Assembly: GCF_016433145.1 (NCBI RefSeq)
Contig: NC_058133.1
Coordinates: 252,551,881-252,615,880 of the forward strand
Source of the DNA: Gracilinanus agilis
Lineage: Eukaryota
Direction: 5' to 3'
Length of the DNA: 64,000 nucleotides
Translations under genes and position numbers: made by a program
In this document: one piece after another, positions 17,506-40,000 of the stretch
How the letters are laid out: every line of letters begins with the position of its first letter
Numbering within the stretch: the first letter of the stretch is position 1
Notes under the pieces: model-generated
What the model was told of the DNA's origin: nothing
The model's input: only the letters and a program-made list of their open reading frames with translations
The model's database searches: none

Positions 17506-19578
17506 CTACTGCAGCCCAACAACTGGAAGACGACAGTTGTCCCTTTTGCTACATTCATCACCCTTGTTGGAAAGGGAGGAAGGGTTGACAAGGGCACCCT
17601 GACTTGCACACTCACCCTCTTCACCCAGCCTCCCGAACTTGATCTTGGCATAGGTATGGGGCCGGGCCCCACGGGTAGGGACCAGAGGACGAGCCTGAGC
17701 CTGGGCCTGACTGCTTTGTCCTTCTTGCCCCGGAAGATCCAGGTCGACGTAGTTGAGGCTGCTTTCCCGGTTGGCAGTGGGAGTCTCCTCTGCCCTGCCG
17801 GCCTCCATGGCTAAGTAGACTGGACCTTCAATGCATTCGTATTCCTCTGCCGGCTCCAGAGCCCGGGGGGTTGTCAGTTTACTGGCATCCTGGTGTTTAC
17901 AGCGGCCGCTTTGGCTATCGTTGCAAGTCGCCGGATTGCCAGGGGGAAGCAGCTTTATTAATCTGTGCTGCGGCTCTGAGTAGTGGGGCACTGAGCTGGA
18001 GGAGTTCCTCGGCGACTCCGGGAAAGACCGATCCATGGTCATATATTCGGAGCCACCCCAGTTTCCAAGTGGCCGATTTGGAGGATTAGGAAGCGATGTA
18101 TCCGTCGGGGGCAACCCCATCACCATGTAACCCTTGGCCTCGATGCCTCCCATGGACACATAGTCGCCCTCGGCCTCCATAGCTATGTAGTCCCCCAGCC
18201 CACTTGGCTCCAGCCCCACCTCTGCCTTGAGGGCATAGCTCCCAGCATGGCTCTCTTCTCGAGCCACACCCCAGGCCCGAGGGGGGCTCATCTGGATATA
18301 ATCTTGGCCCCGGTGAGCTCGGGCAGCGGGTGTGGTTGGAGACTCGGGTCGGGCCAGGGCCGGGGACTTAGGGGCGGCCGGGGAGGTTCCCTGAAGTTGC
18401 TGTTCTGTGCCCAGCCCGGTCCCACCAAGCCGTTTCATTGCGTCCAGCACAGTCTCATGGATATTCCGGGCCACCAGCGCGTCGGGAGCCTGCAGCCACA
18501 GCTCCCCCGGCCCTGTGGGTGCCGATCTGCCGAGCTCCAGGAAAAAGAAGGCGTCGGTATGGCCACAACGCCGCACACTGAGTAGGGGCAGCGAGAGGGC
18601 AGGGGGCGGCAAGGAAGGGACACGGCGAGGGCTTCCGGATTCCCAGACCTCTCCGGTTTCCCTGGGCTTCCGCATGAGCCCCAGCGCCCCGGAGCTCAGG
18701 CACAGTCGGTAACAGCCGCAGCCCAGGCTACGGGTCTGTAGCCCGAGCCCCTTGGGCCGCAGGGTCACTGGCCACACCTCCTGGCACGCAGCGGGGTCTC
18801 GGGCCCCGGAGTCCTGGTCCGGGCTCCAGCCTGCAGGGAGGGAGGAAGGATGACGGGGAGTCTGAGCGGACAAATTCGGAAGACCCGGGTAAAGGGACCT
18901 GCGGGATTATTTCTGCAATGAGTGCCCCTAGGGGGAAGGCGGGATCCGGATAAAAGGAACCCACCGATGGAAGGAAACCTTTTGCCAGGTTCCCCACTAG
19001 GAACCTCCACAGGTCTAGACTTCTCCCCCTGGTGGACAACCCAGACTATCGTCCGGGACTCCCTGGACCGCTTTTATCTTCCTTCTAGACCTGAGGCTCT
19101 CACCTGTGCTTGCGCCCCCGGCGGCAATGGCGGTAGTCGCGGCCGCCGCGCGGAGCTCGAGTATGGCGCGGAACCAGGTCTGCTGCTCCTCTTCACTGGC
19201 AGCCGCCAAGCCTAGGCTGCTGTAGTGAGTGTAGAGTAAGATAAGGTGGCCCAGACGCGTATCGGCGCTCTTGGTGATAGTGCACGCTCCCACCAAACTC
19301 ACGCTCCACTTAGGGCGCACGGCCGTGCCACCTTGCAGCCCCGGCTCTTTCTCGGCGCAGGTAGCGCGAAATTTCTTCTCACTCTTGTAGCATTCTAGTC
19401 GCGGAGGCTCTGCGCGGAGCACGAAGAAACGAAGCCGCTGCGACTTTTGCTTCCGCAGATGACCGCAGAGCCATACATCAGTGGGACAGGACCAGGGCAG
19501 AGGAACGGTCCGCGAGTCTGCGGAGGAGTGGGACTCCAGGGTTGCACCAACCCTAGTACCACATGTGCCCTGCTCCAT
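17506..19578 (-). CDS. IRS3: Insulin receptor substrate 3, intact, 599 aa, 2 exons
   Basis: Exon 1 19578-19104 (ATG in aagATGG context), GT-AG intron 19103-18831, exon 2 18830-17506 (1800 nt total). PH domain CGHLRKQKSQRLRFFVLRAEPPRLECY, PTB domain VWPVTLRPKGLG..SVRRCGHTDAFFFLELGRSAPTGPGELWLQAPD, YxxM motifs, NYVDLDL and TYAKIKF. An upstream in-frame ATG at 19689 is possible. Confidence 0.95.
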
Positions 19579-20029
19579 CTTTGGGCCTAGGGGTCGAAGA
19601 ATTGACCTAGACTTGGAAGCAACTAGGGAAAGAGAGGGTGGGGGAGTTGTGGACGTGAGTTCTGAGTAATGAATGAAACGTGCATGCATTCTGCCAGGTA
19701 GGGCAGTTCTTTAGTGGGGCTAGGTCTTCAGGGCTGCTTGAACCCCGCTGTCTCCCCAGCGCTGGTTAAGCTAACCCAGGAGAGCTATCGCCTGAGTCCG
19801 CTGCTATCTCCTAGCTCCGACTTCCCCAGGGGGAAGGGGAGAGAGTGGCACAGCGAGCCCAGGTTCAGTTGGTCAGCGCTGTCTGGCTTCCCTGTGAGTT
19901 CCTTAGGAGTCTGGGGTGGACGCAACAACTCTAGCTCCTTTGGCAGTCCCTGGGGACTGCTACCTAGACCGCTCTCAGAGTCCCACTCTTCTAGGGATTT
20001 AACCCCCTACGGACCAGAGGGAATACTGG

Positions 20030-20700
20030 GGTAAGGCGGGGACGTTAGGATTTTGCCTAGTAAGGGAAGAATTGACCGGAAACTTGAGACTCGGCATTCG
20101 CCACCGCGCGGCGCTGTAGCGAGTTGCCAGAAGTCGCTTGTGAGGGAAGAATTTCGAGCCTGAGGAAGAAGGGAAGGATTGTGTCTCCCGGCGTCAAGCT
20201 CGAAGGGTGGTGTTTGAGACGTCGGCCAATCAATCCCTTTGGACAAACCGGCCAAGTGCTGGCCAATAGGCATTCGCCGCCAGTTACCTCCTCGCCCCGC
20301 CCTCCCGCTCCTGGCGGTGGTCTGGCGATTCGACCTCAGCTCCAAACTACCCCGCCCCCAATCCCTACCGAATCCCCTCCCCGCAGTAACCGTGAAGGCG
20401 AAGGCGAAGGCGAAGGCTGAGGCTTTATCAGCTGTATTGGTTGCTTGTAGTTGGGTCGGAGTAGGAAGAGTTTAGCAGTTTAGCGTAGTTTTTTATTTCC
20501 AGTCGCCGGAAGATTTTGAGAAGGCCTGCAGCGGCCCCCAGCGGAAGGCCAGGCCCACCAGGACCCCAGCCAAGTGTCCGCTGAAGGAGACCCTGGGAAG
20601 GAGAAAGAGACTGTTGGGAGCGGTAGTTCGATGCTTCTGCCCCTGGGTCGGTCTTGAGCCGAAACCGAATAGGCTCCGGGGACTTTTTCGTTAGAGCAAT
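20030..20700. promoter_or_regulatory. CpG island upstream of IRS3 (probable IRS3 promoter), overlapping the last rhomboid exon
   Basis: CpG-rich; CCAAT boxes near 20226 and 20263; GC boxes (CCCGCCC) near 20296 and 20351; (GAAGGC)4 at 20394-20417. Confidence 0.6.
20492..20497 (-). terminator. Putative poly(A) signal overlapping the rhomboid stop codon
   Basis: Minus strand reads TGG AAA TAA AAA, so the stop is embedded in AATAAA. Confidence 0.45.
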
Positions 20701-21854
20701 GTGGACATTAATCGAATCCCCTATGTGGACACTTGTGTAAGAGCAGTTTGAAGAAGGGCATTATCTGAGGTCACTGAGCTCCTGAAGAGTGAGGAGCCCC
20801 AATGAAGGGGCAAATGAACACATGATGCAGAAACATAAGACGCCACGTGGCAAAAGCCCGGGGAATCGGGATCAGGAAAATCTTAGAAATTAGGGAACTT
20901 CATTGTGGCCGCAGTTGCACCATGTAATTCTTAGCACATCAGGAGTCAGGTCCGCCCTCACATACACACATAGTCTATGAATCCTGGTGAAGTTTACGTT
21001 TGTCCCCAGCCCAACCCAAGCACCCCACTCACTTGGGGGCGATTACGCTGACCACCAAAGATTCTGCCAGGCACAACAATAGGTTCCCCACAAGGTTGCT
21101 GTCGGAGCTGGACATCACCTGCATGGCAAACAGGACACCTTGGGGGTGGAGGGGAAGAGGACTCCATGGGTTTACTACCCTCCAGGAGTCCCAGATTCTC
21201 TTCCCACCCCCTCTCCTTTCCAAAGGAATCATGAAAATTCCCAGCTACACGGTATAGCTTCATCCTTGGGAGAAACATAATATAGCTCAAGGCAAAGCAA
21301 TTTCTCTGGATATTTCAGGCTGGATTAGTGTGGAGGTTCAGAATGACTGCTCTATCCAGAATTTGGTTGACCTGAAGCAATGGAAGACTGATTTTCCATG
21401 ATACCACCCTACCCCGCCACCCCTGGGGTTTTTTTTCTCTTTGAAATAGGATTTTCCTGTCCCTCCTTGTACCCGAGAAGCCAAGCGCACAACCAGCACG
21501 GTAACCAGGATCTCGGAATGGCACCTCCATGGCCAAGTTGAGGACAAGGTGAAGGAAACCTGTGAACAGCGCAGCTGAGAACATCAGGATTAGCATTCGA
21601 CCTGTGCCCACAGACTGTTCCAGATGACGTCCAGTCAGCCACAGCCCCACCACATTGCAGGCGAGGTGCCAGGGGTTCTCATGGTGCACAGGTGCCAGCA
21701 GCAGCAAAAGCCACCAGCGGTTGGCTGTAGCCAGTGAAAGGCAGGAATTGTTGGGGTCCAAGAGTGGCCACAGGAACAGGCTTATAATAAAGGATATGGT
21801 CCCCACTGTGGCTTGGGGCCAGGGTACTGGCCCCTCTTTTATTGCTATCACCAT
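20493..21854 (-). CDS. RHBDD1/RHBDL4-like rhomboid intramembrane serine protease, 195 aa, 3 coding exons
   Basis: Exons 21854-21473 (phase 1), 21138-21033 (phase 2), 20592-20493; GT-AG introns; 588 nt open frame. Protein: MVIAIKEGPVPWPQATVGTISFIISLFLWPLLDPNNSCLSLATANRWWLLLLLAPVHHENPWHLACNVVGLWLTGRHLEQSVGTGRMLILMFSAALFTGFLHLVLNLAMEVPFRDPGYRAGCALGFSGVLFAMQVMSSSDSNLVGNLLLCLAESLVVSVIAPKVSFSGHLAGVLVGLAFRWGPLQAFSKSSGDWK. Contains HHxxxWHxxxN, GFSG (Ser127) and GHLAG (His169). The exact N-terminus is uncertain. Confidence 0.9.
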
Positions 21855-24210: not shown

Positions 24211-24934
24211 TGGTGGATACAAAGATTTGCTGGCTATAAGTGTTCTGTGGTTGAGCTGGGATGCAACAGGAGAAGGAAACCACCTATGGCCCACTTTACA
24301 AGTGAGGAACTGAAGCAAACATGGTTAAGTGACTTGCTCGGAATCACACAACTATCATGTGAAGACTAGATTTGAATTCAGGAAGATGGCACTCTCCACT
24401 TCCGCCATCTAGCTGCTCCTGAGAGGAAGTTAATGGCAATCAAAACAGCTTTAGAGGGTAGATACTTAAAGGGGAAAAAAGCTGGAAACTTAGGTGGTGT
24501 CCATCAACTAGAGAACAGCTAAACAAACTGTGGTATATGAATTGCCACAGTAATGGTATATTACTATGCTATTAGAAATGAAGAATGAAGGGAGATTTCA
24601 GGAATTCTGCCAAGATGTATGAACTAATTCAAGGTGAAGTGAACAGAAGAGTAACTTAAATAAGGACAACACTATAAATAAAAACAACTTTGAGAGACCT
24701 AAAGGAACTATTATGAAAGCATTTGTATACCTCCTACAGAGCTGGTGGACTCAGTGTGCAAAAAGACACTGTATGGACTTGTTTTGCTTGACTATCTGTA
24801 GACACAGTTTGTTTTTGGCAGGGGGGATATGCAATTATGATGCCAAAGGAAAAATAGTGGCCACTGAAATACTTTTTAAAATGCACAGAATATTCAGGAG
24901 GAAGCACAAAGAACAGCTTTGAAAGTAATGCAAA

Positions 24935-24940
24935 TTTATT
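24935..24940 (-). terminator. Putative AGFG2 poly(A) signal (about 3.1-kb 3' UTR)
   Basis: AATAAA on the minus strand in AT-rich 3'-end-like context; position is inferred only. Confidence 0.4.
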
Positions 24941-27900
24941 ATATACATTTTTAAAAAGCAAGCAGTATGGATATACATAAGTTTTATATGCAAAATCCTT
25001 ACATATACAGAGATACTCTTTTTTTTTTTGGCGTTAAGTTCAAAATTAAAAATTTTTAAAAACAAACAAAAAAACTCCAGGTTCCACACCCAGAGCTGCT
25101 CCTCTCGTCCTAGGTCAGTGACAGGATCAGAACTAGTGTTCCCACCGAACTTGGAGAGATAAGGAGTGAGGCTAGGAATGGAGAGGGTTGGTTGGAAGCA
25201 TTTGAAGTCCTTGGTCTCACTCTTCCTAAAGCTACCTTGAGATCTGTGGCTGACTTAGCCCTTTCACCTATGACCATCTGTCCTGAAATAGCTAAGGGTC
25301 CTAGAAACAGAATGGAGAAAAGATGACAACAGAACTGGCTAACTCAGTAAATGCCAGGGAAAAGTTGGAGGGGGCCACTGAACCTAGGGCACTAAGTACC
25401 AGGGAAAGAATCTGGCACACAAAGGCATCTTGGATCTCTAGCTCTTTAAATTAGTTCCAACTAGCAGTGATTTTTGAAGGATTTTCCTTGGTAAAAGAAG
25501 AATGGGGGGGGGGGGAAGGTAGCATTCAAATTATGGGAAAACAAGAAGTCTGAGGATAGCTCTCACCACACAGCATGCCAACCAGGTTCTTGACTCCCTT
25601 ACTACCTCAAAAGCACCCAAACAAGGCTAGTGAGAGGAGAAAGGAAAGGAAAAAAAATGAAAAAAGTATAAGAACATGAGAAGACATAGGGTGAAAAAAG
25701 CCAAAATGGGAGAAATGGAGACAGAGAATATCAAGATCAGTTTTGGAACCAACATTGATGGTGTGAGGTATTCTTAAGACTTCCATTGGTTTTCTCCCTA
25801 AAGGAGAAATTCATTGAGGTTCTGCAAAGTAAGCCCTCAATTCATTTTCCTCTTTTGCCTAGGAGTGCAGCCTTCGGAATGAAGGGCCTCAGGCCTGGGT
25901 GTGCACCAAATTTGCTTCCTTGCATAGGCCTTTAGGGAGAAGTACCAGCATGACTAGGCATAGCTGCCCATACTGGGGAGTAGATCTTTACAAAAATGGG
26001 AGGGAGGGAAGAAAGATATGAGGAGCATGACTTCTGTTGTCCCAGGAAGATGTGACAAGTTTCTCAGTGCTTAGATTTCCCATTTTCCCCTATCAAAACC
26101 AGTTTTAATGGGTCAGGAGCTGGGGATAGAGGAAAGTTAATTAGACCACAATCTGCACTCTGCTCTTCAACAAGGATACGGTGAAATTGATCCTAGCTAG
26201 GAAAAATTACACTCAGCTAAAAGCATTTTCCCAGAAAACTTCCCCAAACCTAAGAATCTCCCATACCTCTAGTGTTACTGATGGTCAAAGACCCAAATAT
26301 ACCCACAAATAAGAGAAGGTGAAACTGTAAGCAAGCCCTCTCATCTGTCTATCATATTGTTGTCCCAAATAGCAAGGTCATAACTCTCTGCTTCAGTCTG
26401 AATAGAAAGTTTACCCTAAGCAGATATCCATGTCCCCATACAAACAGCTCAGCTTCAAGAGCTGTTGACATAACACAATGGACTGGAAAATATAAGCAGC
26501 TGTGTTTGCCTGAGTTGGTTGTCAGGGATGTTATGGGAATGCCTTGGTAGTCTGGTTAGGTATGAGCAAATTCAACACTAAAGGAATGAATGAGAGTCAC
26601 TCTCATTCCTGTCCATCTTTCCCTCCATATAGGAGAAATGCCCATACCCGCCATTCCATCTCAACTCTCTCTTTGGAGTCACTTTGCCAGGAAGGCCTGT
26701 GCTAGTTCATAGATGATGCTGTTGTCTGGACAAAGAAAAAAAATTCTAAATTAAGCTAATCGGGGAAGTTTGCTGGTGTGTGAAACCAAGGGCCCCAAAA
26801 GCCAGACCATAAGCAGCAATTTTTTCTTTCAAATCAAAGTTCTTTTCCAACAATGCCTTTGATGAACTTTAGTGCAAGAATCAAAGTCAGGGCAGAACAG
26901 GAAATGTGAAAAAACAAAGCAGCAACTGCACAAAAATCTCCCCTATGGTAGTCCAGGAGGTAAGGCTGGGAGTGACCATGAATTCCCATCAAGGCTGAGG
27001 GAGGAATGGTCAGAGTAGATAAGGAATTCCTTCGCTACCCATAAATATCAGTTACCTGGTGACTCTTGGGGACAAAGTGTACAGAAGGGTGGTTGTATAG
27101 ATTATAAGTATCATATATATGTATATGTGTGTGTGTGTATATATAATAGGCTATATTAGAAAACTCTGGGTGTGTTTACAAAACACTGGTATCCAAACAT
27201 TGAAACTAACAGTTAACTAAAGTGCCTGACATGAGGGGAATAGGCTAAGGGGTTAAATTGATAAAATACTTTTGCAAACAGAACTGAAAAGGAGAGAAGC
27301 AGCTTTGATATGAGGGACAGGAACCTTCCCTCATTGCATGTAGGGGAGGCTGGTTTAGGGGTTTGTGCAAGAAAGAAGAAGGCTTTCTTTGGGGATGTGG
27401 AAGGTGAGAGGAGGGTTGCTAAAGTGCCCGGCTATGCAGAAAGAAGCCAGGGTTGAAGGTGCTCCAACTCTAGTGCCATTCAATGCTTGTCCATGTGCTT
27501 GCCATGCCTGGTTTCAGCAGTCATAGCTCCCACTCTTTTGGCTGGGAATAGGACCTCTTGGCATGATGGGAAAGATCCACATATGGGTTCAGCTTCTCTT
27601 AGCCTCCCAGCAGTTATACTAGAGCACTAAGAGGAGAAAATTTGTGTCAGCCTGCACCTATAACTCTCTCCACAGGAGAAGGCTTTAGGAACTGGGAGAA
27701 GCATGTATATAGGGGAGGAAGGATGATAAGGAAAAATTTTAGAATAATAAAACACACCAGGGCCAGCCAATTCTAGTAACCATTCCCACTGTTCTCACTG
27801 CTCTGGGAGAGGGCTACTGGCCATGGGGCTCTTGTTTTATCTTCAAGCCCAGAGCAAAGCATTAACATTTTCATTATCCCCATGATTCCCACCACCCAGA

Positions 27901-28038
27901 GCAAGGCAAGTTCTGCCCCATCTTGGGCTGAGATCACAGTAATGCCAACAAACAAAGGTGGCCACCAGGGTTCTAGGGAACAGAGGGATACTTGGGGGTA
28001 GAGGGAGCAGGAAGGATGATGTCCCTCTGGGCACTGTG

Positions 28039-31000
28039 CTACAAGAAGGGATTCGTAGGAGGAGGTTTGGAGGCAAATGGGCTTGATGAGGGTCCAGTCT
28101 GAAGAGAAAAGAACAAAATAAATAATAATCAGATTCAGGAAGAGGAAATGGCAAATTCCAGCGTCAATCCCACCCCCAAACTGTGTCAGGAAAATGTGGG
28201 ACAAGGAAACAAGACCTAAAGAGAGAAGATAGGTTCAAAGAAACAAATAGAAAAAGGACTAGATTAGAGACCCTTGAGTCAGAATCTGACCTAGACAGCA
28301 GCCAGCACAACACAGAGAATTCATTCCTAATTATGTCCAGTGACACAGGTCCCTATTTCCAACACATCCACATGAGGTCTCCCCACACCCTCTAGATTTC
28401 TTCAAGAGTCATTCTCTTCTTGCCTTACCATGAAGGGGTTGGTAGAGATCCCTGCTGGATGGCTCACAGGCCTTTGCCCCAGTTTGGCTGCTCCTAACCC
28501 CACAAAGCCAGAGCCTAAAAAGACAAAAAAATAAAATAACACCATTTAATTTCAATGAATAGTAGCATTCATCAGAGCTTAACCAAACTTATCATGGAAA
28601 GGTAATATAAACCTGGACAATCTTTCTTGTTTCCCCAGATAGTAGGCATATTCCACATTCCCAGCAGGGACTGGGGAAGAGAAAAGAAGATACTCCCAAG
28701 TTTTGGGGGATGTGTACTCCTAAGGCTCCTCACTTGAGGATACACAGGTTTTATTCCTTCTTTACTACTCTATACCTATATATAAGAAAATGAATAGTTA
28801 TCTCAATTCTACTGTGAAACAGAATTAGAGTCCTTTACCATTCTGCTGTTGAACCAGCAACGTTTGTGGAGGGAGGAGACTGGGAGAGAAAGTTCCAGGG
28901 AAGCCACCTGGGGTTGGTGCAGAAGAAAAGCTAGGAACCACAGTGTTCATCCCCAAACCAAGTCCTGTGGATACAAAGCAGATGAAGTGGAACTGAGCCT
29001 CTGAAAGACAGGATTCAAGTCAGTTTTATCAAGACTATACTTGATGAGAGAAACAGGTTTCTCCAGACCAAAAATCAACTCATTTAGTTGTCCTGAATAG
29101 AACTCTAAAACCTTCAGCTTCTAGATCAACCCTGAGTCCACTGCCAACCATGTTCAAAAGCAGAGGGGCTCTGGAATTCAGGGTTCCAAAGAGAGTACTG
29201 TATTCATGTTGTTGCTGCATATAGTTAGTTGTACTTTTCCAAATGAATTTTTAAGAGTTCTCTTAATTTCTTTGAGAATTTGGGAGTGGGAAGGCTAAGA
29301 CCACTGAGGTTGGGAAAGTTAAAGATGAGGAATAAAATGGGAGACTACAAGGTGAGACAGCATGGATAACATGGCCCTGGATGACAGAGTTCCTAAAGGA
29401 GAACAGAAACAGAAAAGAGTTGTTTATAATAAGGAAAACTGGGAGGGTGTTGGTAAGGGAAGGAAAGAGACTGTCTATTATGAAGCACCACTGAAAATTA
29501 CTTCAGAAGTAGCAAAGAGATACAAGTATTAAGGGCTCCAACTTATTAAGGAAAAAGGGATTCACCCACAGTGATATGGCAGAATTTGGCTCATGGTGAT
29601 TATGAGTTAAAGTTGGAAAGACAGTGATCAAAAACAAAAACAATCTGATATACCTATAGCTTCCAGTGATAATCTGAAGGGGGAGAAAAAAGACTTCCTT
29701 AAAAAGATGCTTGGAAATCTGGAGACGACAGAAAACAACAAAAGAAACTTACCTGAGGCCAGGCCATTGGATTGGAATGGGTTGGTGGAAGGCAACTGTG
29801 GATGAGGAGCCGGTGCTATGAAAGGGTTGGTGAAAGCTAAATGTTGAGGAAGTAGGTGAAGGCACAGTTAGTATTTTCTTACTGACAAATATTTTTCAAT
29901 CTTCCTTGGCCTGTTTTTCACCCTCTTTCTCCTTTCCAGTACCCCTAATCTCTGCTGCCTTTGTTGATTTTCTCTTACTAGGTTTCCACATAACCCTAGC
30001 TCCCTACAAGTGGAACTCACCCCCATATCCAAGTCCAGTACTGCTGCTGCTGCTGTTATTACTGCCAGTAGCAGCAGTGTGGAGTCCAGAGACATGGCCA
30101 ACAGTCCCAAAGGCTCTGTGAGAGAAGAGAAAAACTCTATTACTAGTATCAGGGAAATAAGAATCCTCCACTATGAACTAAGAATTATTGGATGCTCATG
30201 CAAGCAAATCTTGGTCCTTACCTTCAAAGGTATTAAATAGAAGGTATTGAGAGGAAAAAGCAAGGAAAGCTAGGGACTGCATGGAACAGAGTGTCAGGGT
30301 CAAAAAAAAAAACAAATCTAGGCTTTTCACTTCTCTTTCTTATGATGGGGAATCCACAATCTCAACCTACCTACTAGGAATGCCCCCAGTTGACATTCCA
30401 GTTCCCAAGACATTGCTCATATCTGAAAGGGCACTTGGCTGGTTGGCAGGAGCAAGAGGAGAGGCACCAAATGGCGTCACCTGGCTGCTGCCTGTGAAAA
30501 GAAATGAGACAAGTATAGTGATAAGAGAGAAAGGTGGAGGAAGAGAGGGACTACCCCTAAGTTTAAGAGGAGATATTCCTCCCCTAATCCATCTCCAATC
30601 CTTAATAAAAAGTGGGGGCGGGGCAGAGTTAGGGCTATATTATACTAATATTTCTAGAGATCCAGAAATCTAAACCTCCTTTACTACTCCAATGTCCAGG
30701 AGCTTTTATCCCTTACGAAGCTGTGTTTTTTTCTTATCTCTTTCCTTGTTCTAGTTCCAGCCACATTTTTCTGATTTCTGACTTCAAAAGATGAGAAAGC
30801 CTGTCCTTGCTCAACATCCTAATAGTCCTATCTTGCCAAAATAAAGGTAAGTAGGAGTGAGTCAATAGTGGCAAGTTAAGGGTTCTAGATCTGAATGTAC
30901 CAAATCAAATAGATCTCAAAAAGGAGATCCACCTGCTGTGGAGTCAGTCCCACCTAGTGAAGCCAACCAGCTACAATCTGACCAGTTTGACTATTCTTCA

Positions 31001-34000
31001 TTAATAATAACAGCTATCATTTATATATCATTTTAAAGTCTGCAAAACCCTGTATTTCATTTGGGTCTCCCAATCACCCTGTTAAGACAGAAACTACAGG
31101 TATTATTTTCTAATAAAAATGTATGAACAGGGTAACCAGGTAGCTCAATGGGCTAAGAAACAGAAAGGAGGTACTATGTTCAAAACTGCCCTAAAACAAA
31201 ACTTCCTAGCTATCTGTCCCTGAGCAAGTCATTAAACCTCCACTGCCTAGTCCTTACAGTTCTCTTCTGTCTTGGAGTCAATACACACTATTGATTCTAA
31301 GACAGTAGGGAAGGGTCTAAAAAAAAAACCCTTTGAACAGATTAAAGTAAACCAAATATTATCTGAGTTTTTCATTATCTAAAGCAGAACTTCTTAACCT
31401 TTTGTGTCATAGGCCTTGAGGAGACAGATGATGTCTATAGGCACTTTCTCAGAATAATATTTTTAAAAGAATAAATCAAAAACATAGGATTATGAAGGAA
31501 GCCAATTATATAGTCATAGTTATCAAAATATTAAAAACAAAATTCCTGTTTCCCAGGATTAAGAAACACAGATAAAATGTGTCACATTGAATGGGGACTG
31601 GTTTTGGGGACAGGAAGGAGGAGACACATGAGGGCTCTGAGGCATCTAAAAATCCTATGCCCACTAAATAGTATTCCTTAGAATCCAAGAGCTCTGGTCT
31701 TGCACAGGCAAGATCAGGGATCTGCAACCTTTTTGGCTGTGAGAGCCATAAACGCCACATTTTTAAAAATGTAATTTTGTGAGAGCCGTACAATATGTTT
31801 AACACTGAATACAAGTAAATATGTGCATTTTATGTAAGAACAACATTTTTAAAGTACAATAAGTCTCTGAACTATTTTAATAACGTTATTATGTGCTAAC
31901 CAATGATGAATAAAGTACATTAATGTGACTTCTGGTGCTGCATAGTTTTGCTGATTATTAGTCAAAATTATTTTGATTATTAATAAAAAACAAGACTTAA
32001 TGGGGCACTATAGTACTGATATAACTGCACACATACATATAAAACTGCTTTACACTAAGAAAATTGCTGAAGTAAAGAGAGAAAAATTCAGGGAAGAATA
32101 CTTTTTCCTCTCCCTCTCTCAAGTCAGGCAACAGGAGAAGAAAAAGCTGCCAGCCTGCTGGTTAAGCCATTTGGCCAGGTATTAGTAAGTAGTGGGGAAG
32201 GAGGGTACCTTTTCATGGAAAACTGGCCAGGACACATCACACACATTTCCTGGTACAGGTGTTTCAGTGCTGCCTACTCAATCATCCTGTATCAAATGAA
32301 ACAACTCCTGGGGAGAAATGCTTCTCACTAATGAAAAGATGTAAAGATGTAATCTGACTATAGTTCCCCTTTAAGAGCAGGTAGAAAAGTTAAAAACAAT
32401 TAACAATCCCACAAATAGGGAGTGCAGACCCCATGAATGCACTGAGATAAAGCCATGTAAATCAGAGGCAGAGGGATAGAGAATGTAGACAAAAGTGATC
32501 AATCACTATACAGAACCTCAAGATGTCAGTAATAGGTGTGGAAAAAGTAAAAGGAGGGCAGAAGGAGGAACACACGGCACACCTACCAAGACAAACTAAA
32601 GACCAGGATTCATCTCACGCGGCAATATCAATGAGGGAGCTTCTATCTTAGAAGATAGTCGCAGTACCGAAAGGATCACGTGAGTATCATGTCATGCATA
32701 AACTGTTAGTTGTTGTGCCTCAGTTGACTTTATGGCTCCTGCATAAAGAGCCAGATATAGCTTGAGAGCCATACATTGCTGACCCCTGGGCAAGATCATC
32801 AGACAGTTGCTTTTTTTCCATTCTCTACAGAGGAAGCCCATTCTATTCACATGTGTTCTAACCACTCCTCTGGGTAAAGAAAGCACACTCCATCCTTCTC
32901 TTTAAGCTACCAGGATGAAAACCCAGAGAATGAGTCATGTCAGAGGGGTCCCATCTTTATCCCTGAGATCCAATGCTTCTTTGAATTCTAAACTTGTGAA
33001 AAGTTTTAGGTGACTACATTTGCCTCTGGCAAATCACCTATCCTCTGGGCTAAAATCATCTATCTTATACAAATATCAAGACAGTAAGTCCACAGACAAG
33101 AATCTGATTGATTAAAAGTACCATGTTGTTTTGTTACAAAGCTGGAGTGAATATTGTGCTAATTATTGATACAAAGCAGTTAATAGCAATCATTTCATTT
33201 AAACTTCACACCAATTTCCTTATCTATAAACTGGACTATATTACAGACTTAGGGCCAAAAAGGATTTTAAGAAAGTCCTACTCTCTCATTTTATGAATGA
33301 GGAAATTGAGGTCTCAAGGTAGGTGAACTGACTTTGAACAATCAAATCAAATGCAGGTCCTCAGAATCAATCCAGTTCTTCTAATGTGTCATGCTGCATT
33401 TTTTTAACCCTTCTCTTCCCTTTTAGAATCGATACTGGGCAATGATTCCAGGGCAGAAGAGTGGTAAGGCCTAGGCAATAAGGGTTAAATAACTTGCCCA
33501 GGGTCACACAGCTAGGAAGTCTCTGAAGCCACATTTGAACATAGGACCTCCTGTTTCTAAGTCTGGCTCTCAATCCACTGAGCCATCTAGTTGCTCCCCA
33601 TCATGCATTTTAAGGTCAATTTCAGTTCTAAATTTATAAGCAGGATCACAAAGCTTGTAAGCATATGAAGCAAGATTCCAACCCTGACCTTTTGACATGA
33701 TCATGCCAGGGTGCCTTTCTTATCTTTACTAAAGCAATATTAAGGGCAAAAAAAAAATTTGCTGTTCCATTTAGCATCCCTCTTCAATAAATCCTTAATA
33801 ATACACATGAGGCATCATGGGGCAGGGAACCAAGAACCAGGAAGATGTCTCTCTGACATCATTCTAGCTGTAGAGTACTGGACACGTTATTTAACTTCTC
33901 TGTTTTAGGCAATTCTCTAAGATTACAAATCGAAGAAAAAGTACTGAATTTCCTTTACCCTATTGCAGTGAAATTAGAGAAGAAATAAGTATTTGTTAAA

Positions 34001-37000
34001 TGCCTACTATGTACCAAGTATTGTGTTAGGAACTTTACAAATATAATCTCATTTGAATTATCACCCCCATTTTACAGTTGGTCAAACTGAGGCAAATACA
34101 AGTTAAGTGATATAGCTATTAAAGTAATTAATATAGCTATTAAGTATCTCAGGTCTTTCTGGCTTCAAAGTATAGCTCTATTCACTGGATCATCTAGCTC
34201 TCTCAAGCTGACCCAGGCTATGATCTTGTAATTTCGACCTTGATGATTCATGCTGCAGGTAAGTTTGAATTAGATCAGGGGTTGGCAAACTTTTACTGTA
34301 AAAAAAGAGCCTGTCATTTTAAGCTTTGCAGATCATGGAGCAAAAATTGAGGATATTACATACTTATAACTAAAGAGAAAATGAACTTCCACAATTTTTT
34401 AATGAAAATAAAAACATAATATTAGAAACCCTTTTTTGTAACAGGTCTATGAATGAGAATAGAATTCCTTTCTGGGCAATGACATTTCACTTTAATAGGA
34501 CTTCAAAGTTAATATTCCTTTTAATTGAAATTGATTACAAATGTTCATCAATGCTAATCTCTAATGAGATTTTAGAGATTTCATCTTTAAAAAATGTCTT
34601 TTCACACAGAGAGGTACTGCCAAATACTGTTATCAATCCATAAGCATATGATATTAACTAAGCATATTCATCTCTTGAAAGGCACAAAAAGAAAGTCTTC
34701 CTTTTAGCATGTCAAATTGCAAAGAAATCATGTTCCACCTGAAGGGTTAGATGGAAACTTCTCAAATGCATAATTAAATGGATTTTGAAATATGGAAATA
34801 TTGAGATTTTGCACTTGTATCAAGGTCTGAAAAACTCTGCTAGAAATGCAGTTTGAGTTCAGAAAATATATTCGTTACAAATTTGTGAGAAAGAAGATCT
34901 TGTTCCTTGTTTTAACTTATAACAGCATGGAAAAGGTATTAAAAACAGCCTGGAATTACCTGTGATTCTGATATTAGTTGCTGAGTTGATTTCGCCATAG
35001 AATAAGTTTTGCAAATAAGCACAATTGTGCCTTCTAATTTTAGGTTGAATTCATTAAGAAACATTATCAAGTCTGCAGCAAAAGCTAATTTCCAAAGCCA
35101 TTTAAAGGTTAATAAGAGAGTACAATTTTTATTTTGAAAAATTTCTGGGGCAGCTGGGTGGCTCAGTGGATTGAAAGCCAGGCCTAGAGACAGGAGGTCC
35201 TAAATTCAAATCTGACCTCAGGCACTTCCCAGCTGTGTGACCCTGGGCAAGTCACTTGATCCCCCAATTGCCTACCCTTACCACTCTTCTGCCATGAAGC
35301 CAAAACACAGTATTGACTCCAAGAACAGAAGGTAAGGGTTAAAAATTTTTTTTTTTTGTTTTGATAATGATGGGTATATCACTGGTAATTTAAAAAAAGT
35401 AATTTTCCACTAATGAGCTGCACAAAAATGGAGCAAGATTTGGCCAGTGGATCATAGCTTGCCCATTCCTAAATTAAATGATCCTTAAGACGTCTTTCAG
35501 TCTGGGACCAATAAACAAGTAAAAGTAAAAATGAATTGAAAGCAGGTACAATTCTTCATAGCTGTCTGAGGATCTATATTGATAAAATAGTATCTCTATT
35601 GAATCTAATAATACAATCAGGTGTCCAGATAAAAAAGGAGTGTCAAGTTCAATGTTAAACGTCTTTTTCTAATTCTCTAGTCCCAGATCAGAGAAGCAGG
35701 CTAGTTAGGGGGTGTCAAGAGGCTGTGGGCACCATCTAGTGGTAAAACTTACAATGGATAATTTAATTCAATCCACCAAAGTGAAAAGAATCCAACGGGA
35801 TTGGAGTTTAATTAGATGGGAAAAAGGGACTTAGAATGATAGATTTTGAGCTGGAAGGGACAAATACAACATCCTAATTTTTTTAAAATAAGTAAACTGA
35901 GGCCCAGAGAGGTAACATAAATTTACCAGGGTCACAGCTAATAAGTTTCTAAGGCAGGATTTGAACCTACATCTTCTAGACTCCAAGTCTATTGCTCAAT
36001 CTACTATATATTGATGCCATCACTCAAAATGAAACTGAAAAGGTTCTGGGCTTGGGTAGGGTATTAGGGGGTTTGGATAAGCCTCTTGGTAAGGTAGACA
36101 TTTAAGGCTTACTTTTTTTCCCCAGGTGGTTTCCCTACTTTCTGGAACTCCATGCAGAAAAAAGGGAAAAACCAAGATCACTGAAAAGAGAAAGGGAGTG
36201 GATACTGATCAACAAGTATTTCTTAGATGTCTAATATCTATATGGCACAGTGCTATTTATCCATCAAAGTTAAACACTTGTTTTTCCCAGGAGACAAAAG
36301 TTATTTGTGGCTAATAGTGAGACAAGAGGCTCAAATAAACATCTGGACCTGAAGAAGCTGGGGAAACTTTAAGAATCCACTCATTAACTGACAACAAAAC
36401 TTCTCAAGCTAAAAGATAAATGCTTTCCCCGATATACACTGTCAGAAAGTCAAAGGACACATCAAGCAAGAGCAGAAAAAAAATACCCTTGACAAATTCC
36501 AACTACCCCATCTACCTCAATGCATTTCATAAGACACATTGAGGGAGAGAGAGGTTAAGTCTAGGCTGGATCTGACTCTAGCCTGGCCACCCCCAGGCAA
36601 ATATGGTATATGAACAAATCCTCCCACTCTTGGCTTCAGCTCTAAATCTAGTCTTGTCCTGGTAAAATAAAAACTCATATTCCTAAAAGGTTCATCTGTA
36701 CATATGTCCCTCTCACATATATGTATAATTATTCTTTAACAGGGAAATGGAGTTTACTGTTAATTGCAATGGGGCAAATCAAATGCTCTGAGGATTTTTA
36801 TTGATGTGGCTGAAGATGTGGCCTTCAGCAAGACTGGCACTAAGAAAAAGAAAATAGGTTGAGACACAATGGGGGAGGTACTCAAATCTCCATTCCCTCT
36901 ACCTCACTGGTGCCCAAATTCTCCACCTTGAATCTTGTATTCGTTTTACTAGGTATGACATAAGCCCTTGACCTTTCTTTAAAATCTGAGGGCTGGGGGC

Positions 37001-40000
37001 AGCTGGGTGGCTCAGTGGATTGAAAGCCAGGCCTAGAGACAGGAGGTCCTAGGTTCAAATCCGGCCTCAGACACTTCCCAGCTGTGTGACTCTGGGCAAG
37101 TCACTTGACCCCTATTGCCTACCCTTACCTCTCTTCTGCCATGAAGCCAAAACACAGTATTGACTCCAAGACAGAAGGTATGGGTTTAAAAGAAAAAAGT
37201 CTGAGGGCTGTCTCCTCCTTTAGGGTCATACAGATCAAGGCTTACAAGTGGCCAGAGAAGCCCTTCTCAACAAACTCCTTTGAGAGTTAACTTCCAGCAT
37301 GAGGAAATTTAAGGTGTCCCTCCTACTCAAGGTTACAATTACACTGCACATCTCTAATTTACCCCGTTCCCTCTCATCCCCTCTATATTTTAAAGAAAAG
37401 CCTCTCCTCTGTCAGCCATAAACTCCTGAAACACAGGGACTGGTTCTGAGTCACTTTACACATTCATGTCTGCTTCTCCTTTTATTTTTTTTTTAACCCT
37501 TATTTTCTGTCTTAGAATCAATACTGTGTATTAGTTCTGAGGCAGAAGAATGGTAATGGCAATGGGGGTCAAGTGACTTGCCCAGGGACACATAGATAGG
37601 ACATCTCTGAGGCCAGATTTGAACCCAGCACCCCCCATCTCTGGGCCTGGCTCCCTATCCACTGAGCCACCTAGCTGCCCCCTTTCCTTCTCCTTCTTAC
37701 AGAAATTTCAACATATCTTAGTGGGAGCATCATATGGCCCTGGGTCTCTAGGGAGACTTTCTGACTTAGGGGAAGCAATCTTACTCATCTCCCTATGGGA
37801 GCTGTTCATATAGCCAAAAGAAACTTAAGAGCTGTACTGGAAACAGGGAAAAATCTGCTGAACTCTCTCATTTAAATGCCTCTTTCTGGATATACCTGAC
37901 ATTCTGTAAATAAATTTATTTGCCACTAAATGTTTATCACATTCATTCTACTATTCTACTATTAATGTGCTTTTAGCAATCAATTATTCCATTCAGGCGT
38001 TTCCCCCCATGACTGGCCAAGGTTGCCCTAATAAAGATTTTCCAGAAGCATGACATCAACTGTATAGCAATCTGGCAGAAGCAATTAGGCATTGCCCATG
38101 CCATTAGGTAAATCTGAAGAATTTAACTCTAAGAGGCCATGATGAAACCATTCAGCCAAAGTCTATCAGTCTACTACAGCTGGCTACACAGAAAGTATGC
38201 TGCTGTCTCTAAAGGTGGAAGAGGAAGGAAGGAAAGAGGGGTATGTCTGTACTTTCTTATTCCTTCTCAAAAACATGAAAATAAAATTGGGTTTTTCAGA
38301 ATGCAAAACAAAACTTTTTTCCCTCTCTCTCCCCGTCCCCAATTTTCATTATGCCTATATGGGAATCACTCCCTGTCCCCTGCCCCACCCCTAACACATC
38401 CTACTTTTCAGTGTCCAGCCTTGACCCTGGGGCCTGATACTTCTGTTCTCAGAGAGTGGAAAGAGTTGGTGTGAGGAGATTTAGTTTTTAATCCTCACTC
38501 TTCCATTAAATTTCACTGTCATCCTGAGTTTCAATTAATCCTCTTTTGACTTTAATTTCCTCATCTGTATTAAGAGCACTAAAAGTCTAATAAGTAGATC
38601 TTTAAACATGAGAAAGGCTGTTTCTGTCCTTCAAGACTCAGAGAAATAAAACTTACCAAAGCTGTAACTTCCAGTAAGCATCTGACTGGCTAGCAATAGA
38701 GAGTGAAAGAAAATCAGAAGAGAGAAGCAGTCAGACTATCATTGTTCCCTGTCCAACAAGAGCCTTGACAATTCTGGGGCTCCATCCTTAAATGCCTTGA
38801 GGTGGCCACACCACCAAGAGAGAGGGAGGGGCAGGGCAGACACTTCTGAGGTCAAATGTCAGGCCTGCCTTTCAATACCTGCAGATGATCCTGGACAAGA
38901 CACTCACTATGGGTCTCTGTTTCCTCACCCTCAAAATGAGGTAATGGACTGAATGACACAAGAGTGACTTTACTCTGAATCTGACACCCACTCTCTGCAG
39001 GGGTGGGGCTTCCTCTGGGCTGACTCCCTCCCTTCCACCCTCCCCACCCAGACACAATACAGATCTCTAGAGAAATAAACTAGGCTCAGGATTACTCTCA
39101 TGCTCTCAAGGTGCCTGGTTGTTCTAGCCAGAAATTGAGTGAAAGCTGACTGAATTCAGTTTTTACCTCTTCTACTACTGTGAGTCTTTCCCTTTGGTCT
39201 TTAGTGGAAAAAGAAAATAGTGGAATCTTCCTCCTTTGAGAAGGCAAGCCATAACCAATTGCCATAGCTTCTTCTCTAAGTTACCCTCAGTACTAACTCT
39301 CTTCAACCTAGGTCTTGGGCACAGTAATGAAAGGAGAATAGGGTAATGGGGAAGAAGAAGCAAGGAGGGGAGAGAAAAACAGTGAGCCCCAATTACCTAT
39401 GGGTGCTGGCTGTGTCTGGAACAAAGCCTGGCCAGCTGGAGGGATGCCTCCCATTGTAGAGGAGAAAGGGCTACTCCCAAAGGCATCAAAGTTGGCAAAG
39501 CCTCCATGAGAAGGCCCCGGGCCTGTAAGTAGAACAAACAGAGAGATTACACACAAGCAGCATAAGAGCCAGAAAACAATGCTTAGAGGATTTCTGCTTC
39601 ACCACACAGCTCTCTTCTCTGGGCTTTGCTTTCCGAAACTTAAAAATAAGATTAGGGAGTGGCTAGGTGAGCCCACTGGATTGAGGCAAAGTGGATAGGA
39701 GGTCCTGGGTTCAAATGTGGCCTCAAGACTTTTCCCAGCTGTGTGACTGTGGGTAAGTCCACTGCCTAGACCTTTACTGCTGTTCTCCCTTAGAACCAAT
39801 ACACAGTATTGATTTTAAGATGGCAATGAAGGGTTTTTAAAATAAATTATCTCAAAGCCCTTCAAATCTGAGACAAGCATATGCAAACAGGAAGGGTCAC
39901 ATTAGAGGGTTCCAATTCTAGTGAATTCTACACATAGTGCCTTTTCACAGAATGACAAAATTTCAGAGGGAAAAGGAGCCTTTAGAGGCCACACAGTCTC

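What the first reader, a model, noticed from the sequence alone, without database searches (positions are those of the whole stretch)
20493..21854. Intact three-exon RHBDD1/RHBDL4-like rhomboid protease gene hidden between IRS3 and AGFG2
Seen in sequence: three minus-strand exons (21854-21473, 21138-21033, 20592-20493) with GT-AG introns and matching phases splice into a 588-nt frame with no internal stop. The ORF track shows only fragments and misses exon 3. The 195-aa product has six hydrophobic segments, the rhomboid HHxxxWHxxxN motif, catalytic GFSG (Ser codon 21474-21476) and GHLAG (His codon 20574-20576). Established: the Ser-His dyad in GxSG / GHxxG defines active rhomboids, and these motifs match RHBDL4 (recalled: PLHHADDWHLYFN, CAVGFSGVLFAL, SFAGHLAGILVG; S144/H195). 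To my knowledge human and mouse have no rhomboid between IRS3(P) and AGFG2. Inference: this is an additional active secretase-class rhomboid retained in marsupials.
Basis: partly seen in the sequence, partly recalled or inferred. Interest (0 to 1): 0.92.

Follow-up and report, generated by a model that had tools for sequence, protein, structure and literature searches.

The report
Tail-less RHBDD1 paralogue kept in marsupials
This is a real, intact three-exon gene for a minimal rhomboid membrane protease, the marsupial copy of an old sister gene of RHBDD1 that reptiles, a caecilian and the coelacanth also keep, that is missing from the placental protein sets searched, and that gene-prediction pipelines have already found in other marsupials but no searchable paper describes.

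Summary
Minus-strand exons 21854-21473, 21138-21033 and 20592-20493 have GT-AG introns and splice into a 588-nt frame for a 195-aa Pfam Rhomboid protein. It carries H58/H63/N67, GFS127G and GH169LAG.

The gene is not truly hidden. NCBI already predicts orthologues, named "rhomboid-related protein 4-like", in six Australidelphian marsupials. It is also not marsupial-only. Short tail-less relatives exist in turtles, squamates, a caecilian and the coelacanth, and they form a well-supported clade apart from true RHBDD1. Turtle has the same IRS–rhomboid–AGFG2 neighbours, and a lizard has AGFG2 beside it. Turtle and caecilian have the same three-exon layout.

Selection maintains the gene:
- The ORF and splice sites are intact in five marsupials (0 of 20,000 neutral simulations).
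- Omega is about 0.5-0.66 (p=0.011 against 1).
- Exons evolve more slowly than introns.
- Neighbouring IRS3 has decayed in Australidelphians.

A high-confidence model of the devil orthologue matches GlpG.

Caveats:
- No transcript evidence could be obtained.
- Protease activity is inferred.
- Marsupials have lost the otherwise invariant Arg of the L1 "WR" motif after a very long stem branch.

The most likely function is a bare-core intramembrane serine protease without RHBDD1's ubiquitin/p97 tail. Interest is moderate.

The parts
21473..21854 (-). Exon 1 (382 nt). The ATG is at 21854-21852. It encodes residues 1-127 plus the first base of codon 128: TM1, the L1 loop, TM2 with H58 (21683-21681), H63 (21668-21666) and N67 (21656-21654), TM3, and the start of TM4 with G-F-S127 (Ser codon 21476-21474).
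   Evidence: The exon is homologous in four Australidelphians, turtle and caecilian.
21139..21472 (-). Intron 1 (334 nt, GT..AG, phase 1). It splits the Gly codon after the catalytic Ser. The position and phase are shared with killifish RHBDD1.
   Evidence: Intron divergence K is 0.20-0.45 with 7-8 gap events against the Australidelphians.
21033..21138 (-). Exon 2 (106 nt in all five marsupials). It encodes the rest of TM4, a shortened TM4-TM5 loop, and TM5 with E153. An internal AG at 21120-21119 is the alternative acceptor used by the frame-shifted database models, whose exon would start at 21118.
   Evidence: (87-89% identity to the Australidelphians, no gaps).
20593..21032 (-). Intron 2 (440 nt, GT..AG, phase 2). 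The position and phase are shared with killifish RHBDD1.
20493..20592 (-). Exon 3 (100 nt). It encodes TM6 with G-H169-L-A-G (His codon 20576-20574) and G172/G176, then a 19-residue end after TM6 and the stop TAA at 20495-20493. No tail follows.
20492..20497 (-). AATAAA hexamer overlapping the stop codon. It is a likely polyadenylation signal and is conserved in devil, dunnart and wombat.
   Evidence: The sequence itself and the orthologous gene ends. Its use as a poly(A) signal is an inference.
17506..19689 (-). Downstream neighbour IRS3. An open 224-aa frame carries a PH domain (19689-19015) and an open 455-aa frame carries an IRS-type PTB domain (18873-17506). Its ATG lies about 800 nt beyond the rhomboid stop codon.
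24432..59703 (-). Upstream neighbour AGFG2. Its 3' part is colinear with the ArfGap gene called in the wombat, devil, bilby and dunnart loci. Two further exons at 51222-51334 and 59609-59703 match the turtle ArfGap gene.

Best explanation
The window carries the didelphid orthologue of an uncharacterised vertebrate gene, called here RHBDD1-like. RefSeq names it 'rhomboid-related protein 4-like'.

Origin. It is an old DNA-level duplicate of RHBDD1/RHBDL4, and it keeps two of RHBDD1's intron positions. It most likely arose with the early vertebrate genome duplications that also produced the pairs IRS1/IRS3, AGFG1/AGFG2 and NYAP2/NYAP1. It has stayed next to IRS3 and AGFG2 since before the mammal-reptile split. 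Among annotated proteomes it survives in marsupials, squamates, turtles, a caecilian and the coelacanth. No copy was found in placentals, monotremes, birds, crocodilians, frogs or ray-finned fishes.

Product. The protein is a bare six-helix rhomboid core of 192-199 aa in marsupials. The expected mechanism, by inference, is intramembrane serine proteolysis. Ser127 at the top of the short TM4 would be activated by His169 in TM6, and H63/N67 of TM2 would shape the oxyanion hole. The protein ends 26 residues after the catalytic His. It therefore lacks the cytosolic tail through which RHBDL4 binds ubiquitin and p97, and cannot work as a ubiquitin-coupled ERAD protease in the RHBDL4 manner.

What is shown and what is inferred. 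Shown: gene structure, fold family, orthology, synteny and purifying selection. Inferred: transcription in this species, catalytic activity, cellular location and substrates.
For: 1. Anatomy and family. The three exons give a 195-aa product. Pfam Rhomboid scores 45 bits against a 22.6 cut-off. The AlphaFold model of the 74%-identical devil orthologue has pLDDT 89.8 and pTM 0.85, with helices at the six expected places. Its 34 best PDB matches are all GlpG rhomboid proteases, TM 0.49-0.69.

2. Catalytic residues. H58, H63, N67, G125, S127, G128, H169, G172 and G176 are invariant in all marsupial copies and in 36 other family members. In total, 38 of 51 family-conserved columns are kept.

3. Orthologues. 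Devil, dunnart, wombat and bilby have identical exon boundaries and intact frames.

4. Selection.
- NG86 dN/dS is 0.27-0.69.
- The codon model gives omega 0.66, against omega=1 with 2dlnL=6.5 and p=0.011.
- For exons 2-3 the canonical frame has omega 0.29-0.88, while the alternative frame has 0.88-1.8.
- Exon K is 0.12-0.29 against intron and flank K of 0.2-0.9. Exons have 0-2 gap events each and introns 5-10, and every reading frame stays intact.
- None of 20,000 neutral simulations kept all five ORFs, start codons and splice sites.
- The adjacent IRS3 sequence in wombat, devil and bilby carries stop codons.

5. Clade. The short paralogues form a clade with 100/96 support, apart from vertebrate RHBDD1, which includes a didelphid RHBDD1. 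Profile scores drop from at least 237 bits for this clade to at most 224 bits for RHBDD1.

6. Synteny. Turtle has IRS, rhomboid, ArfGap in that order. A lizard has rhomboid next to ArfGap. The marsupials have AGFG2, rhomboid, SAP25, LRCH4.

7. Gene structure. Turtle and caecilian have the same three exons. Killifish RHBDD1 has seven coding exons. It shares the two introns but has an extra first intron and three tail exons.

8. Paralogon. Papers place RHBDD1 between IRS1 and COL4A4 with AGFG1 nearby, and place Irs3 with Agfg2, Nyap1 and Lrch4 (PMC12141075, PMC5482937).
Against: - No transcript evidence. The only runs that held the region come from a relative 90-95% alike. Their contigs run straight through both introns like genomic DNA, and no spliced joint was seen.
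- Constraint is only moderate (omega 0.5-0.66).
- The marsupial stem branch is very long, about 2 substitutions per site.
- All marsupial copies changed Arg50 of the WxR motif to Leu, although it is Arg in 36 of 36 other members. They also changed N23 and W73 and deleted a conserved Gly in a shortened TM4-TM5 loop. Catalysis could therefore be weakened or altered.
- Several RefSeq isoforms, and the only database model from the window's close relative (P0001), use an alternative acceptor that destroys TM5-TM6.
- Sequence alone does not date the duplication. AU tests do not reject a later, sarcopterygian-only origin (p=0.20). They only weakly disfavour a mammal-specific origin (p=0.079).
- Absence from placentals rests on annotated proteins, not on genome searches.
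Confidence: 0.75

Rival explanations
1. The protein keeps the rhomboid fold but no longer works as a protease. It would act as a non-catalytic or weakly catalytic membrane-protein handler, in the manner of Derlins or iRhoms, following the burst of change on the marsupial stem.
For: The otherwise invariant WR-motif Arg is lost, as are N23, W73 and a loop Gly. The stem branch is about 2 substitutions per site and omega is 0.5-0.66.
Against: Known rhomboid pseudoproteases have lost the Ser and/or His. Here the dyad, the GxSG and GHxxG contexts and the HxxxN residues are invariant across five marsupials spanning the didelphid-Australidelphian split. That is hard to explain without selection on catalysis.
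Confidence: 0.15
2. The gene is a decaying relic or an untranscribed open frame: an ORF that looks intact by luck, with the database models being prediction artefacts.
For: No spliced reads were obtained. Omega is fairly high. Many predicted isoforms are frame-shifted.
Against: The ORF, ATG and all four splice sites are intact in five species, against 0 of 20,000 neutral simulations. Omega is below 1 (p=0.011). Selection is specific to the canonical frame. Exons are 2-4 times more conserved than introns and have no frameshifting indels. Neighbouring IRS3 did decay over the same period.
Confidence: 0.07
3. The gene is a marsupial- or mammal-specific duplicate of RHBDD1 that only resembles the reptile genes through fast evolution.
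For: By identity the window protein is about equally far from both groups: 38% to caecilian and turtle copies, 36% to dolphin RHBDD1. The AU test for a mammal-only clade gives p=0.079, which is not formally rejected.
Against: The free tree puts the marsupial copies inside the short-paralogue clade (98/85 and 100/96). They sit in the same IRS3-AGFG2 interval as the turtle gene, and the lizard gene also lies next to AGFG2. They share the fused first exon and the truncation after the TM6 exon with turtle and caecilian. The two retained introns rule out a retrocopy.
Confidence: 0.03

Closest known systems
RefSeq 'rhomboid-related protein 4-like' gene models of other marsupials (Sarcophilus P0002, Vombatus P0003, Macrotis P0004, Notamacropus, Phascolarctos; Sminthopsis LOC141566702)
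   Same: These are orthologues. They are 74-75% identical, with the same three exons and phases, the same AGFG2-side neighbourhood and the same catalytic motifs.
   Different: They are computational predictions with no described function. The isoform listed first is often a frame-shifted product that uses an acceptor 20 nt inside exon 2. No correct model for the window's own lineage was in the collection searched.
Short RHBDD1 paralogues of turtles, squamates, Rhinatrema and Latimeria (P0020, P0145, P0158, P0010, P0139 and others)
   Same: They belong to the same clade. Turtle and caecilian have the same three-exon layout. Turtle has the same IRS-rhomboid-AGFG2 interval and a lizard has AGFG2 beside the gene. 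The tail-less copies have the same roughly 190-250-aa architecture.
   Different: Identity is only 34-38%. These copies keep the WxR Arg, N23 and W73 and have a longer TM4-TM5 loop (exon 2 of 121-133 nt against 106). In turtle and lizard the gene points the opposite way relative to AGFG2 (and, in turtle, IRS3), so it was inverted in one of the two lineages.
RHBDD1 / RHBDL4 (ER rhomboid protease of ERAD)
   Same: It is the nearest characterised family member, at 32-36% identity over the core. It shares the HH..H...N, GFSG and GHLAG motifs and two intron positions.
   Different: RHBDD1 is about 315 aa, with a cytosolic tail on extra exons that binds ubiquitin and p97 (established knowledge of RHBDL4). 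It lies beside IRS1 and COL4A4, not IRS3. It forms a separate clade, and marsupials have it as well.
E. coli / H. influenzae GlpG (structural archetype of rhomboid proteases)
   Same: It has the same six-helix fold and the same placing of Ser, His and the HxxxN residues. The top 34 structural matches are all GlpG.
   Different: Identity is 16-20%. GlpG has the W136-R137 pair, whose Arg the marsupial protein lacks.

Membership tests
Rhomboid protease family (MEROPS S54, Pfam PF01694) | Sequence match to the rhomboid domain above the curated threshold | tested here: met
   Exon 1 alone scores 45 bits against a 22.6 cut-off, and exon 3 matches profile positions 121-139.
Rhomboid protease family (MEROPS S54, Pfam PF01694) | Six-transmembrane rhomboid core fold | tested here: met
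   Tested on the 74%-identical devil orthologue, not on the window protein itself. The model has pLDDT 89.8, and its best PDB matches are GlpG at TM 0.55-0.69.
Rhomboid protease family (MEROPS S54, Pfam PF01694) | Catalytic Ser in GxSG at the start of TM4, and His in TM6 followed by a small-residue (G..G) face | tested here: met
   G125-F-S127-G128 and G168-H169-L-A-G172...G176 are invariant in 40 aligned family members.
Rhomboid protease family (MEROPS S54, Pfam PF01694) | TM2 H(x)4H(x)3N residues (oxyanion-hole region) | tested here: met
   H58, H63 and N67 are invariant.
Rhomboid protease family (MEROPS S54, Pfam PF01694) | L1-loop Trp-Arg (WR) motif | tested here: not met
   W47 is kept. 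The Arg column, which is Arg in 36 of 36 non-marsupial members, is Leu in all four marsupial sequences. It aligns with GlpG R137.
Rhomboid protease family (MEROPS S54, Pfam PF01694) | Demonstrated peptide-bond cleavage within the membrane | not testable with these tools
   This needs expression with S127A and H169A controls.
RHBDD1/RHBDL4 orthologue group | Falls inside the vertebrate RHBDD1 clade | tested here: not met
   It falls in the separate short-paralogue clade (100/96). A didelphid RHBDD1 (P0182) falls with mammalian RHBDD1.
RHBDD1/RHBDL4 orthologue group | C-terminal cytosolic tail (p97-binding and ubiquitin-interacting motifs) | tested here: not met
   The protein ends 26 residues after His169. 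The alignment shows about 120 extra residues in RHBDD1, encoded by further exons.
RHBDD1/RHBDL4 orthologue group | Position beside IRS1 and COL4A4 | tested here: not met
   The gene lies between IRS3 and AGFG2. The RHBDD1 position is taken from PMC12141075 and PMC5482937.
Short RHBDD1-like paralogue group (unnamed; RefSeq 'rhomboid-related protein 4-like') | Clade membership, three-exon structure with a fused first exon and a stop after the TM6 exon, and location between IRS3 and AGFG2 | tested here: met
   Sequence alone is weak for the marsupial branch (AU p=0.079); synteny and gene structure carry the case.

The most novel reading that the evidence does not exclude
Vertebrates ancestrally had a sixth active rhomboid protease: a genome-duplication sister of RHBDL4 stripped to the catalytic core and uncoupled from ubiquitin and p97. 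It has been held beside IRS3 for over 300 million years, lost in placentals, birds and most fishes, and remodelled in marsupials (inverted, loop shortened, WR Arg lost) for a lineage-specific substrate or role.
Probability: 0.4. Interest if true: 0.6.

Novelty: new member of a known kind. Interest (0 to 1): 0.45.

Why it matters
Textbook lists of mammalian rhomboid proteases (RHBDL1-4 and PARL) come from human and mouse. This gene would add a further, probably active, member in marsupials and many reptiles.

It offers a natural 'core-only' version of RHBDL4. That could help test what the ubiquitin/p97 tail contributes.

Its position also bears on a question left open in the IRS-family paper PMC5482937: whether the IRS3 locus is a genome-duplication sister of the IRS1 locus. 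An RHBDD1 paralogue sitting next to IRS3, as RHBDD1 sits next to IRS1, supports that view.

The practical value for annotation is modest. The correct reading frame is the one that encodes TM5-TM6, and the database models that shift frame inside exon 2 should not be taken as the main product.

Tried and rejected
- RNA evidence. The sequencing-run search found only runs of a related species (90-95% alike) plus one probable DNA run of the window's own species. The four runs laid down gave contigs colinear with the genome through both introns, and no spliced joint.
- Exact look-ups of P0002, P0139 and P0001 found no contig. Coelacanth synteny, and a dN/dS estimate against the window's closest relative, could therefore not be obtained.
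- The gharial RHBDD1 gene was too long to fetch. RHBDD1 exon structure therefore rests on one fish.
- The caecilian locus had no neighbouring genes within 10 kb.
- A sequence-only search of the PDB gave only marginal GlpG hits, E 2-10. The fold search was needed.
- The bacterial-type promoter and terminator scan is irrelevant to a eukaryotic gene and was ignored.
- Three literature searches for names of this paralogue found no paper or only synteny papers.
- The retrocopy idea was rejected because of the two conserved introns.
- The idea that the rhomboid exons are upstream exons of IRS3 was considered. It is disfavoured by the conserved stop codon inside an AATAAA and by the survival of the gene where IRS3 has decayed, but it was not tested with reads.
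- The window's own spliced protein was not folded because it has no reference. The devil orthologue was used instead.
Full report

Yes. On the minus strand the stretch reads ATG at 21854, a donor GT after 21473, an acceptor AG before 21138, a donor GT after 21033, an acceptor AG before 20592, and TAA at 20495-20493. Joining the exons of 382, 106 and 100 nt gives a 588-nt frame without an internal stop and a 195-aa product. The intron phases are 1 and 2. The mechanical ORF list shows only pieces of the gene.

Exon 1 alone matches Pfam Rhomboid at 45 bits, against a cut-off of 22.6. Exon 3 matches the end of the same profile.

**2. Surroundings**

Immediately downstream on the same strand are two open frames with a PH domain and an IRS-type PTB domain. 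This is IRS3, at 19689-17506. Upstream, from about 24.4 kb to beyond 59.7 kb, the window is colinear with the ArfGap gene AGFG2 of other marsupials and matches two turtle AGFG2 exons. SAP25 and LRCH4 follow below 16.2 kb.

**3. The gene is already predicted elsewhere**

A search with exon 1 returned 'rhomboid-related protein 4-like' models from Sarcophilus, Vombatus, Macrotis, Notamacropus and Phascolarctos, at 58-75% identity. Cluster look-up added Sminthopsis.

The nearest entry is P0001, at 98% identity and presumably from a close relative. It is a 210-aa model that leaves the frame inside exon 2. No product identical to the window's exon 1 was in the collection. A correct model for this lineage therefore seems to be missing, but the gene as such is not new to databases.

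Three full-text searches found no paper that names or describes the paralogue.

**4. Orthologues and selection**

I fetched the wombat, devil, bilby and dunnart loci. Threading the proteins on the DNA gave the same three exons, with identical boundaries and phases. Exon 2 is 106 nt in every species.

- Pairwise NG86 dN/dS is 0.27-0.69.
- A Goldman-Yang model on the species tree gives omega 0.66. This fits better than omega=1 with kappa optimised (2dlnL=6.5, p=0.011).
- For exons 2-3 the canonical frame has omega 0.29-0.88. The frame used by the shifted models has 0.88-1.8. Selection therefore acts on the frame that encodes TM5, TM6 and the His.
- Exons diverge less than introns and flanks. In devil against dunnart, K is 0-0.02 for exons and 0.07-0.12 for introns.
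- Exons have 0-2 gap events each and introns 5-10. All five reading frames remain intact.
- A substitution-only neutral simulation never kept five ORFs, start codons and splice sites (0 of 20,000, even at half the assumed divergence).
- An internal control lies next door. The IRS3-homologous DNA of wombat, devil and bilby is fragmentary and carries stop codons inside the matches, and no gene is called there.

The gene is therefore maintained by selection, although constraint is only moderate.

**5. Fold and catalytic residues**

An AlphaFold2 model of the devil orthologue, built from a 39-sequence alignment, has mean pLDDT 89.8 and pTM 0.85. Its helices are at 15-29, 61-82, 84-113, 127-137, 140-160 and 166-181. 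Foldseek against the PDB gives GlpG rhomboid proteases as the 34 best matches. iRhoms and Derlins follow.

Of 51 columns conserved in at least 85% of 36 non-marsupial family members, 38 are unchanged in all marsupial sequences. These include H58, H63, N67, G125, S127, G128, H169, G172 and G176.

Four changes are not conservative:
- The Arg of the WxR motif, which is Arg in 36 of 36 others and aligns with GlpG R137, is Leu.
- N23 of TM1 is Ile or Leu.
- W73 is Leu or Met.
- A conserved Gly is deleted in a TM4-TM5 loop that is nine residues shorter than in turtles.

Activity is therefore plausible but not assured.

**6. What family it belongs to**

An unrestricted HMMER search of 1.84 billion representatives found only marsupial sequences above 50% identity. 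Below them came a mix of short '4-like' proteins and true RHBDD1 at 34-40%. Names from the cluster look-up showed the short proteins come from a caecilian, the coelacanth, turtles and a cobra. Profile searches added eleven squamates and more turtles, and no placental, monotreme, bird, crocodilian, frog or teleost member. Scores drop from at least 237 bits for this group to at most 224 bits for RHBDD1.

A maximum-likelihood tree (LG+C20, 38 rows) gives a short-paralogue clade with 100/96 support. Its tetrapod part has 98/85 support. It is separate from a vertebrate RHBDD1 clade (93/82) that contains lamprey, fishes, reptiles, a bird, placentals and the didelphid Gracilinanus.

The marsupial stem is very long, at about 2 substitutions per site.

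AU tests are weak. A sarcopterygian-only duplication is not rejected (p=0.20). A mammal-only duplication is only disfavoured (p=0.079).

**7. Independent support for orthology and for an old origin**

- In the painted turtle the gene lies between an IRS gene and the ArfGap gene.
- In a fence lizard it lies next to the ArfGap gene.
- Turtle IRS and AGFG2 exons match the window in the same relative orientation, but the rhomboid points the other way. The gene was therefore inverted in one lineage. From memory of the human map, IRS1 and RHBDD1 are also head-to-head, which would make the reptile arrangement ancestral. This was not tested here.
- Turtle and caecilian genes have the same three exons.
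- Killifish RHBDD1 has seven coding exons. Its second and third introns coincide in position and phase with the two introns here, and its third exon is 133 nt, as in turtle. The short paralogue lacks RHBDD1's first intron and the three tail exons. The copy therefore arose by DNA duplication and not retroposition, and the fused first exon and the truncation are shared derived traits.
- Papers place RHBDD1 between IRS1 and COL4A4 with AGFG1 nearby across jawed vertebrates (PMC12141075). They place mouse Irs3 with Agfg2, Nyap1 and Lrch4, and Irs1 with Rhbdd1 and Nyap2 (PMC5482937).

The pairs IRS1/IRS3, AGFG1/AGFG2, NYAP2/NYAP1 and now RHBDD1/this gene fit a genome-duplication paralogon. I regard it as likely but not proven.

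**8. Transcription**

This could not be settled. Runs holding the stretch belong to a relative 90-95% alike. All four runs laid down gave contigs that continue through both introns, and the only joint is an indel-like replacement inside intron 1.

The many RefSeq isoforms in four species hint at transcript support, because that pipeline normally builds variants from RNA evidence. This rests on my own knowledge and was not checked. These isoforms also show use of an acceptor 20 nt inside exon 2 and of inner donors in exon 1, which give truncated or frame-shifted products.

The stop codon sits inside an AATAAA that is conserved in four of the five species. This suggests a compact transcript ending about 800 nt before the IRS3 start.

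**9. Verdict**

This is a genuine, selectively maintained gene: the didelphid orthologue of an undescribed but already predicted RHBDD1 paralogue. Most likely it encodes a minimal intramembrane serine protease without RHBDL4's ERAD-coupling tail. Its existence between IRS3 and AGFG2 is confirmed. Its restriction to marsupials is not. Its activity, expression, location and substrates remain to be shown.

Noticed in passing
window 17506-19689 (-); L001 12152-13967, L004 12250-12474, L005 12291-12945: IRS3 has long open PH and PTB frames in the window. The homologous DNA of wombat, devil and bilby is fragmentary, with stop codons inside the tblastn matches, and no gene is called there. IRS3 therefore looks pseudogenised in Australidelphian marsupials but possibly intact in this didelphid.
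   Followed up: partly
window 20493-21854 versus L003 10001-11015 and L007 10001-14100: Relative to AGFG2 (and, in the turtle, IRS3), the rhomboid gene points the opposite way in marsupials and in turtle and lizard. This is a small local inversion in one lineage. In marsupials it puts the gene's 3' end about 800 nt upstream of the IRS3 start codon.
   Followed up: partly
window 21118-21120 (-); P0001, P0118, P0115, P0187, P0006: An inner AG acceptor 20 nt into exon 2 is used by the longest RefSeq isoforms of several marsupials and by the only model from the window's close relative. The resulting frame is open in all five species but evolves at omega of about 1 or more.
   Followed up: yes
window 35147-35263, 36996-37120, 40331-40444, 40848-40989, 44083-44208, 52349-52482, 59083-59194: A repeat of roughly 115-145 nt occurs at least seven times in both orientations inside AGFG2 introns. 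It also occurs in the wombat, bilby and dunnart loci at 72-81% identity, and is probably a marsupial SINE.
   Followed up: no
window 21281-21440 (intron 1): In all four laid runs of the related species, 160 nt of intron 1 are replaced by 142 other letters. This is a lineage-specific replacement or insertion inside the intron.
   Followed up: no
window 17616-18833: In run X14 the contig covering IRS3 exon 2 has a word depth of 197, against 44 for the neighbouring contig. Depth is even in the other runs. This is possibly IRS3 mRNA on top of a DNA-like background in that library.
   Followed up: no
window 20396-20420 (-): A short GCCTTC hexamer repeat (four copies) lies about 75 nt beyond the stop codon.
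   Followed up: no
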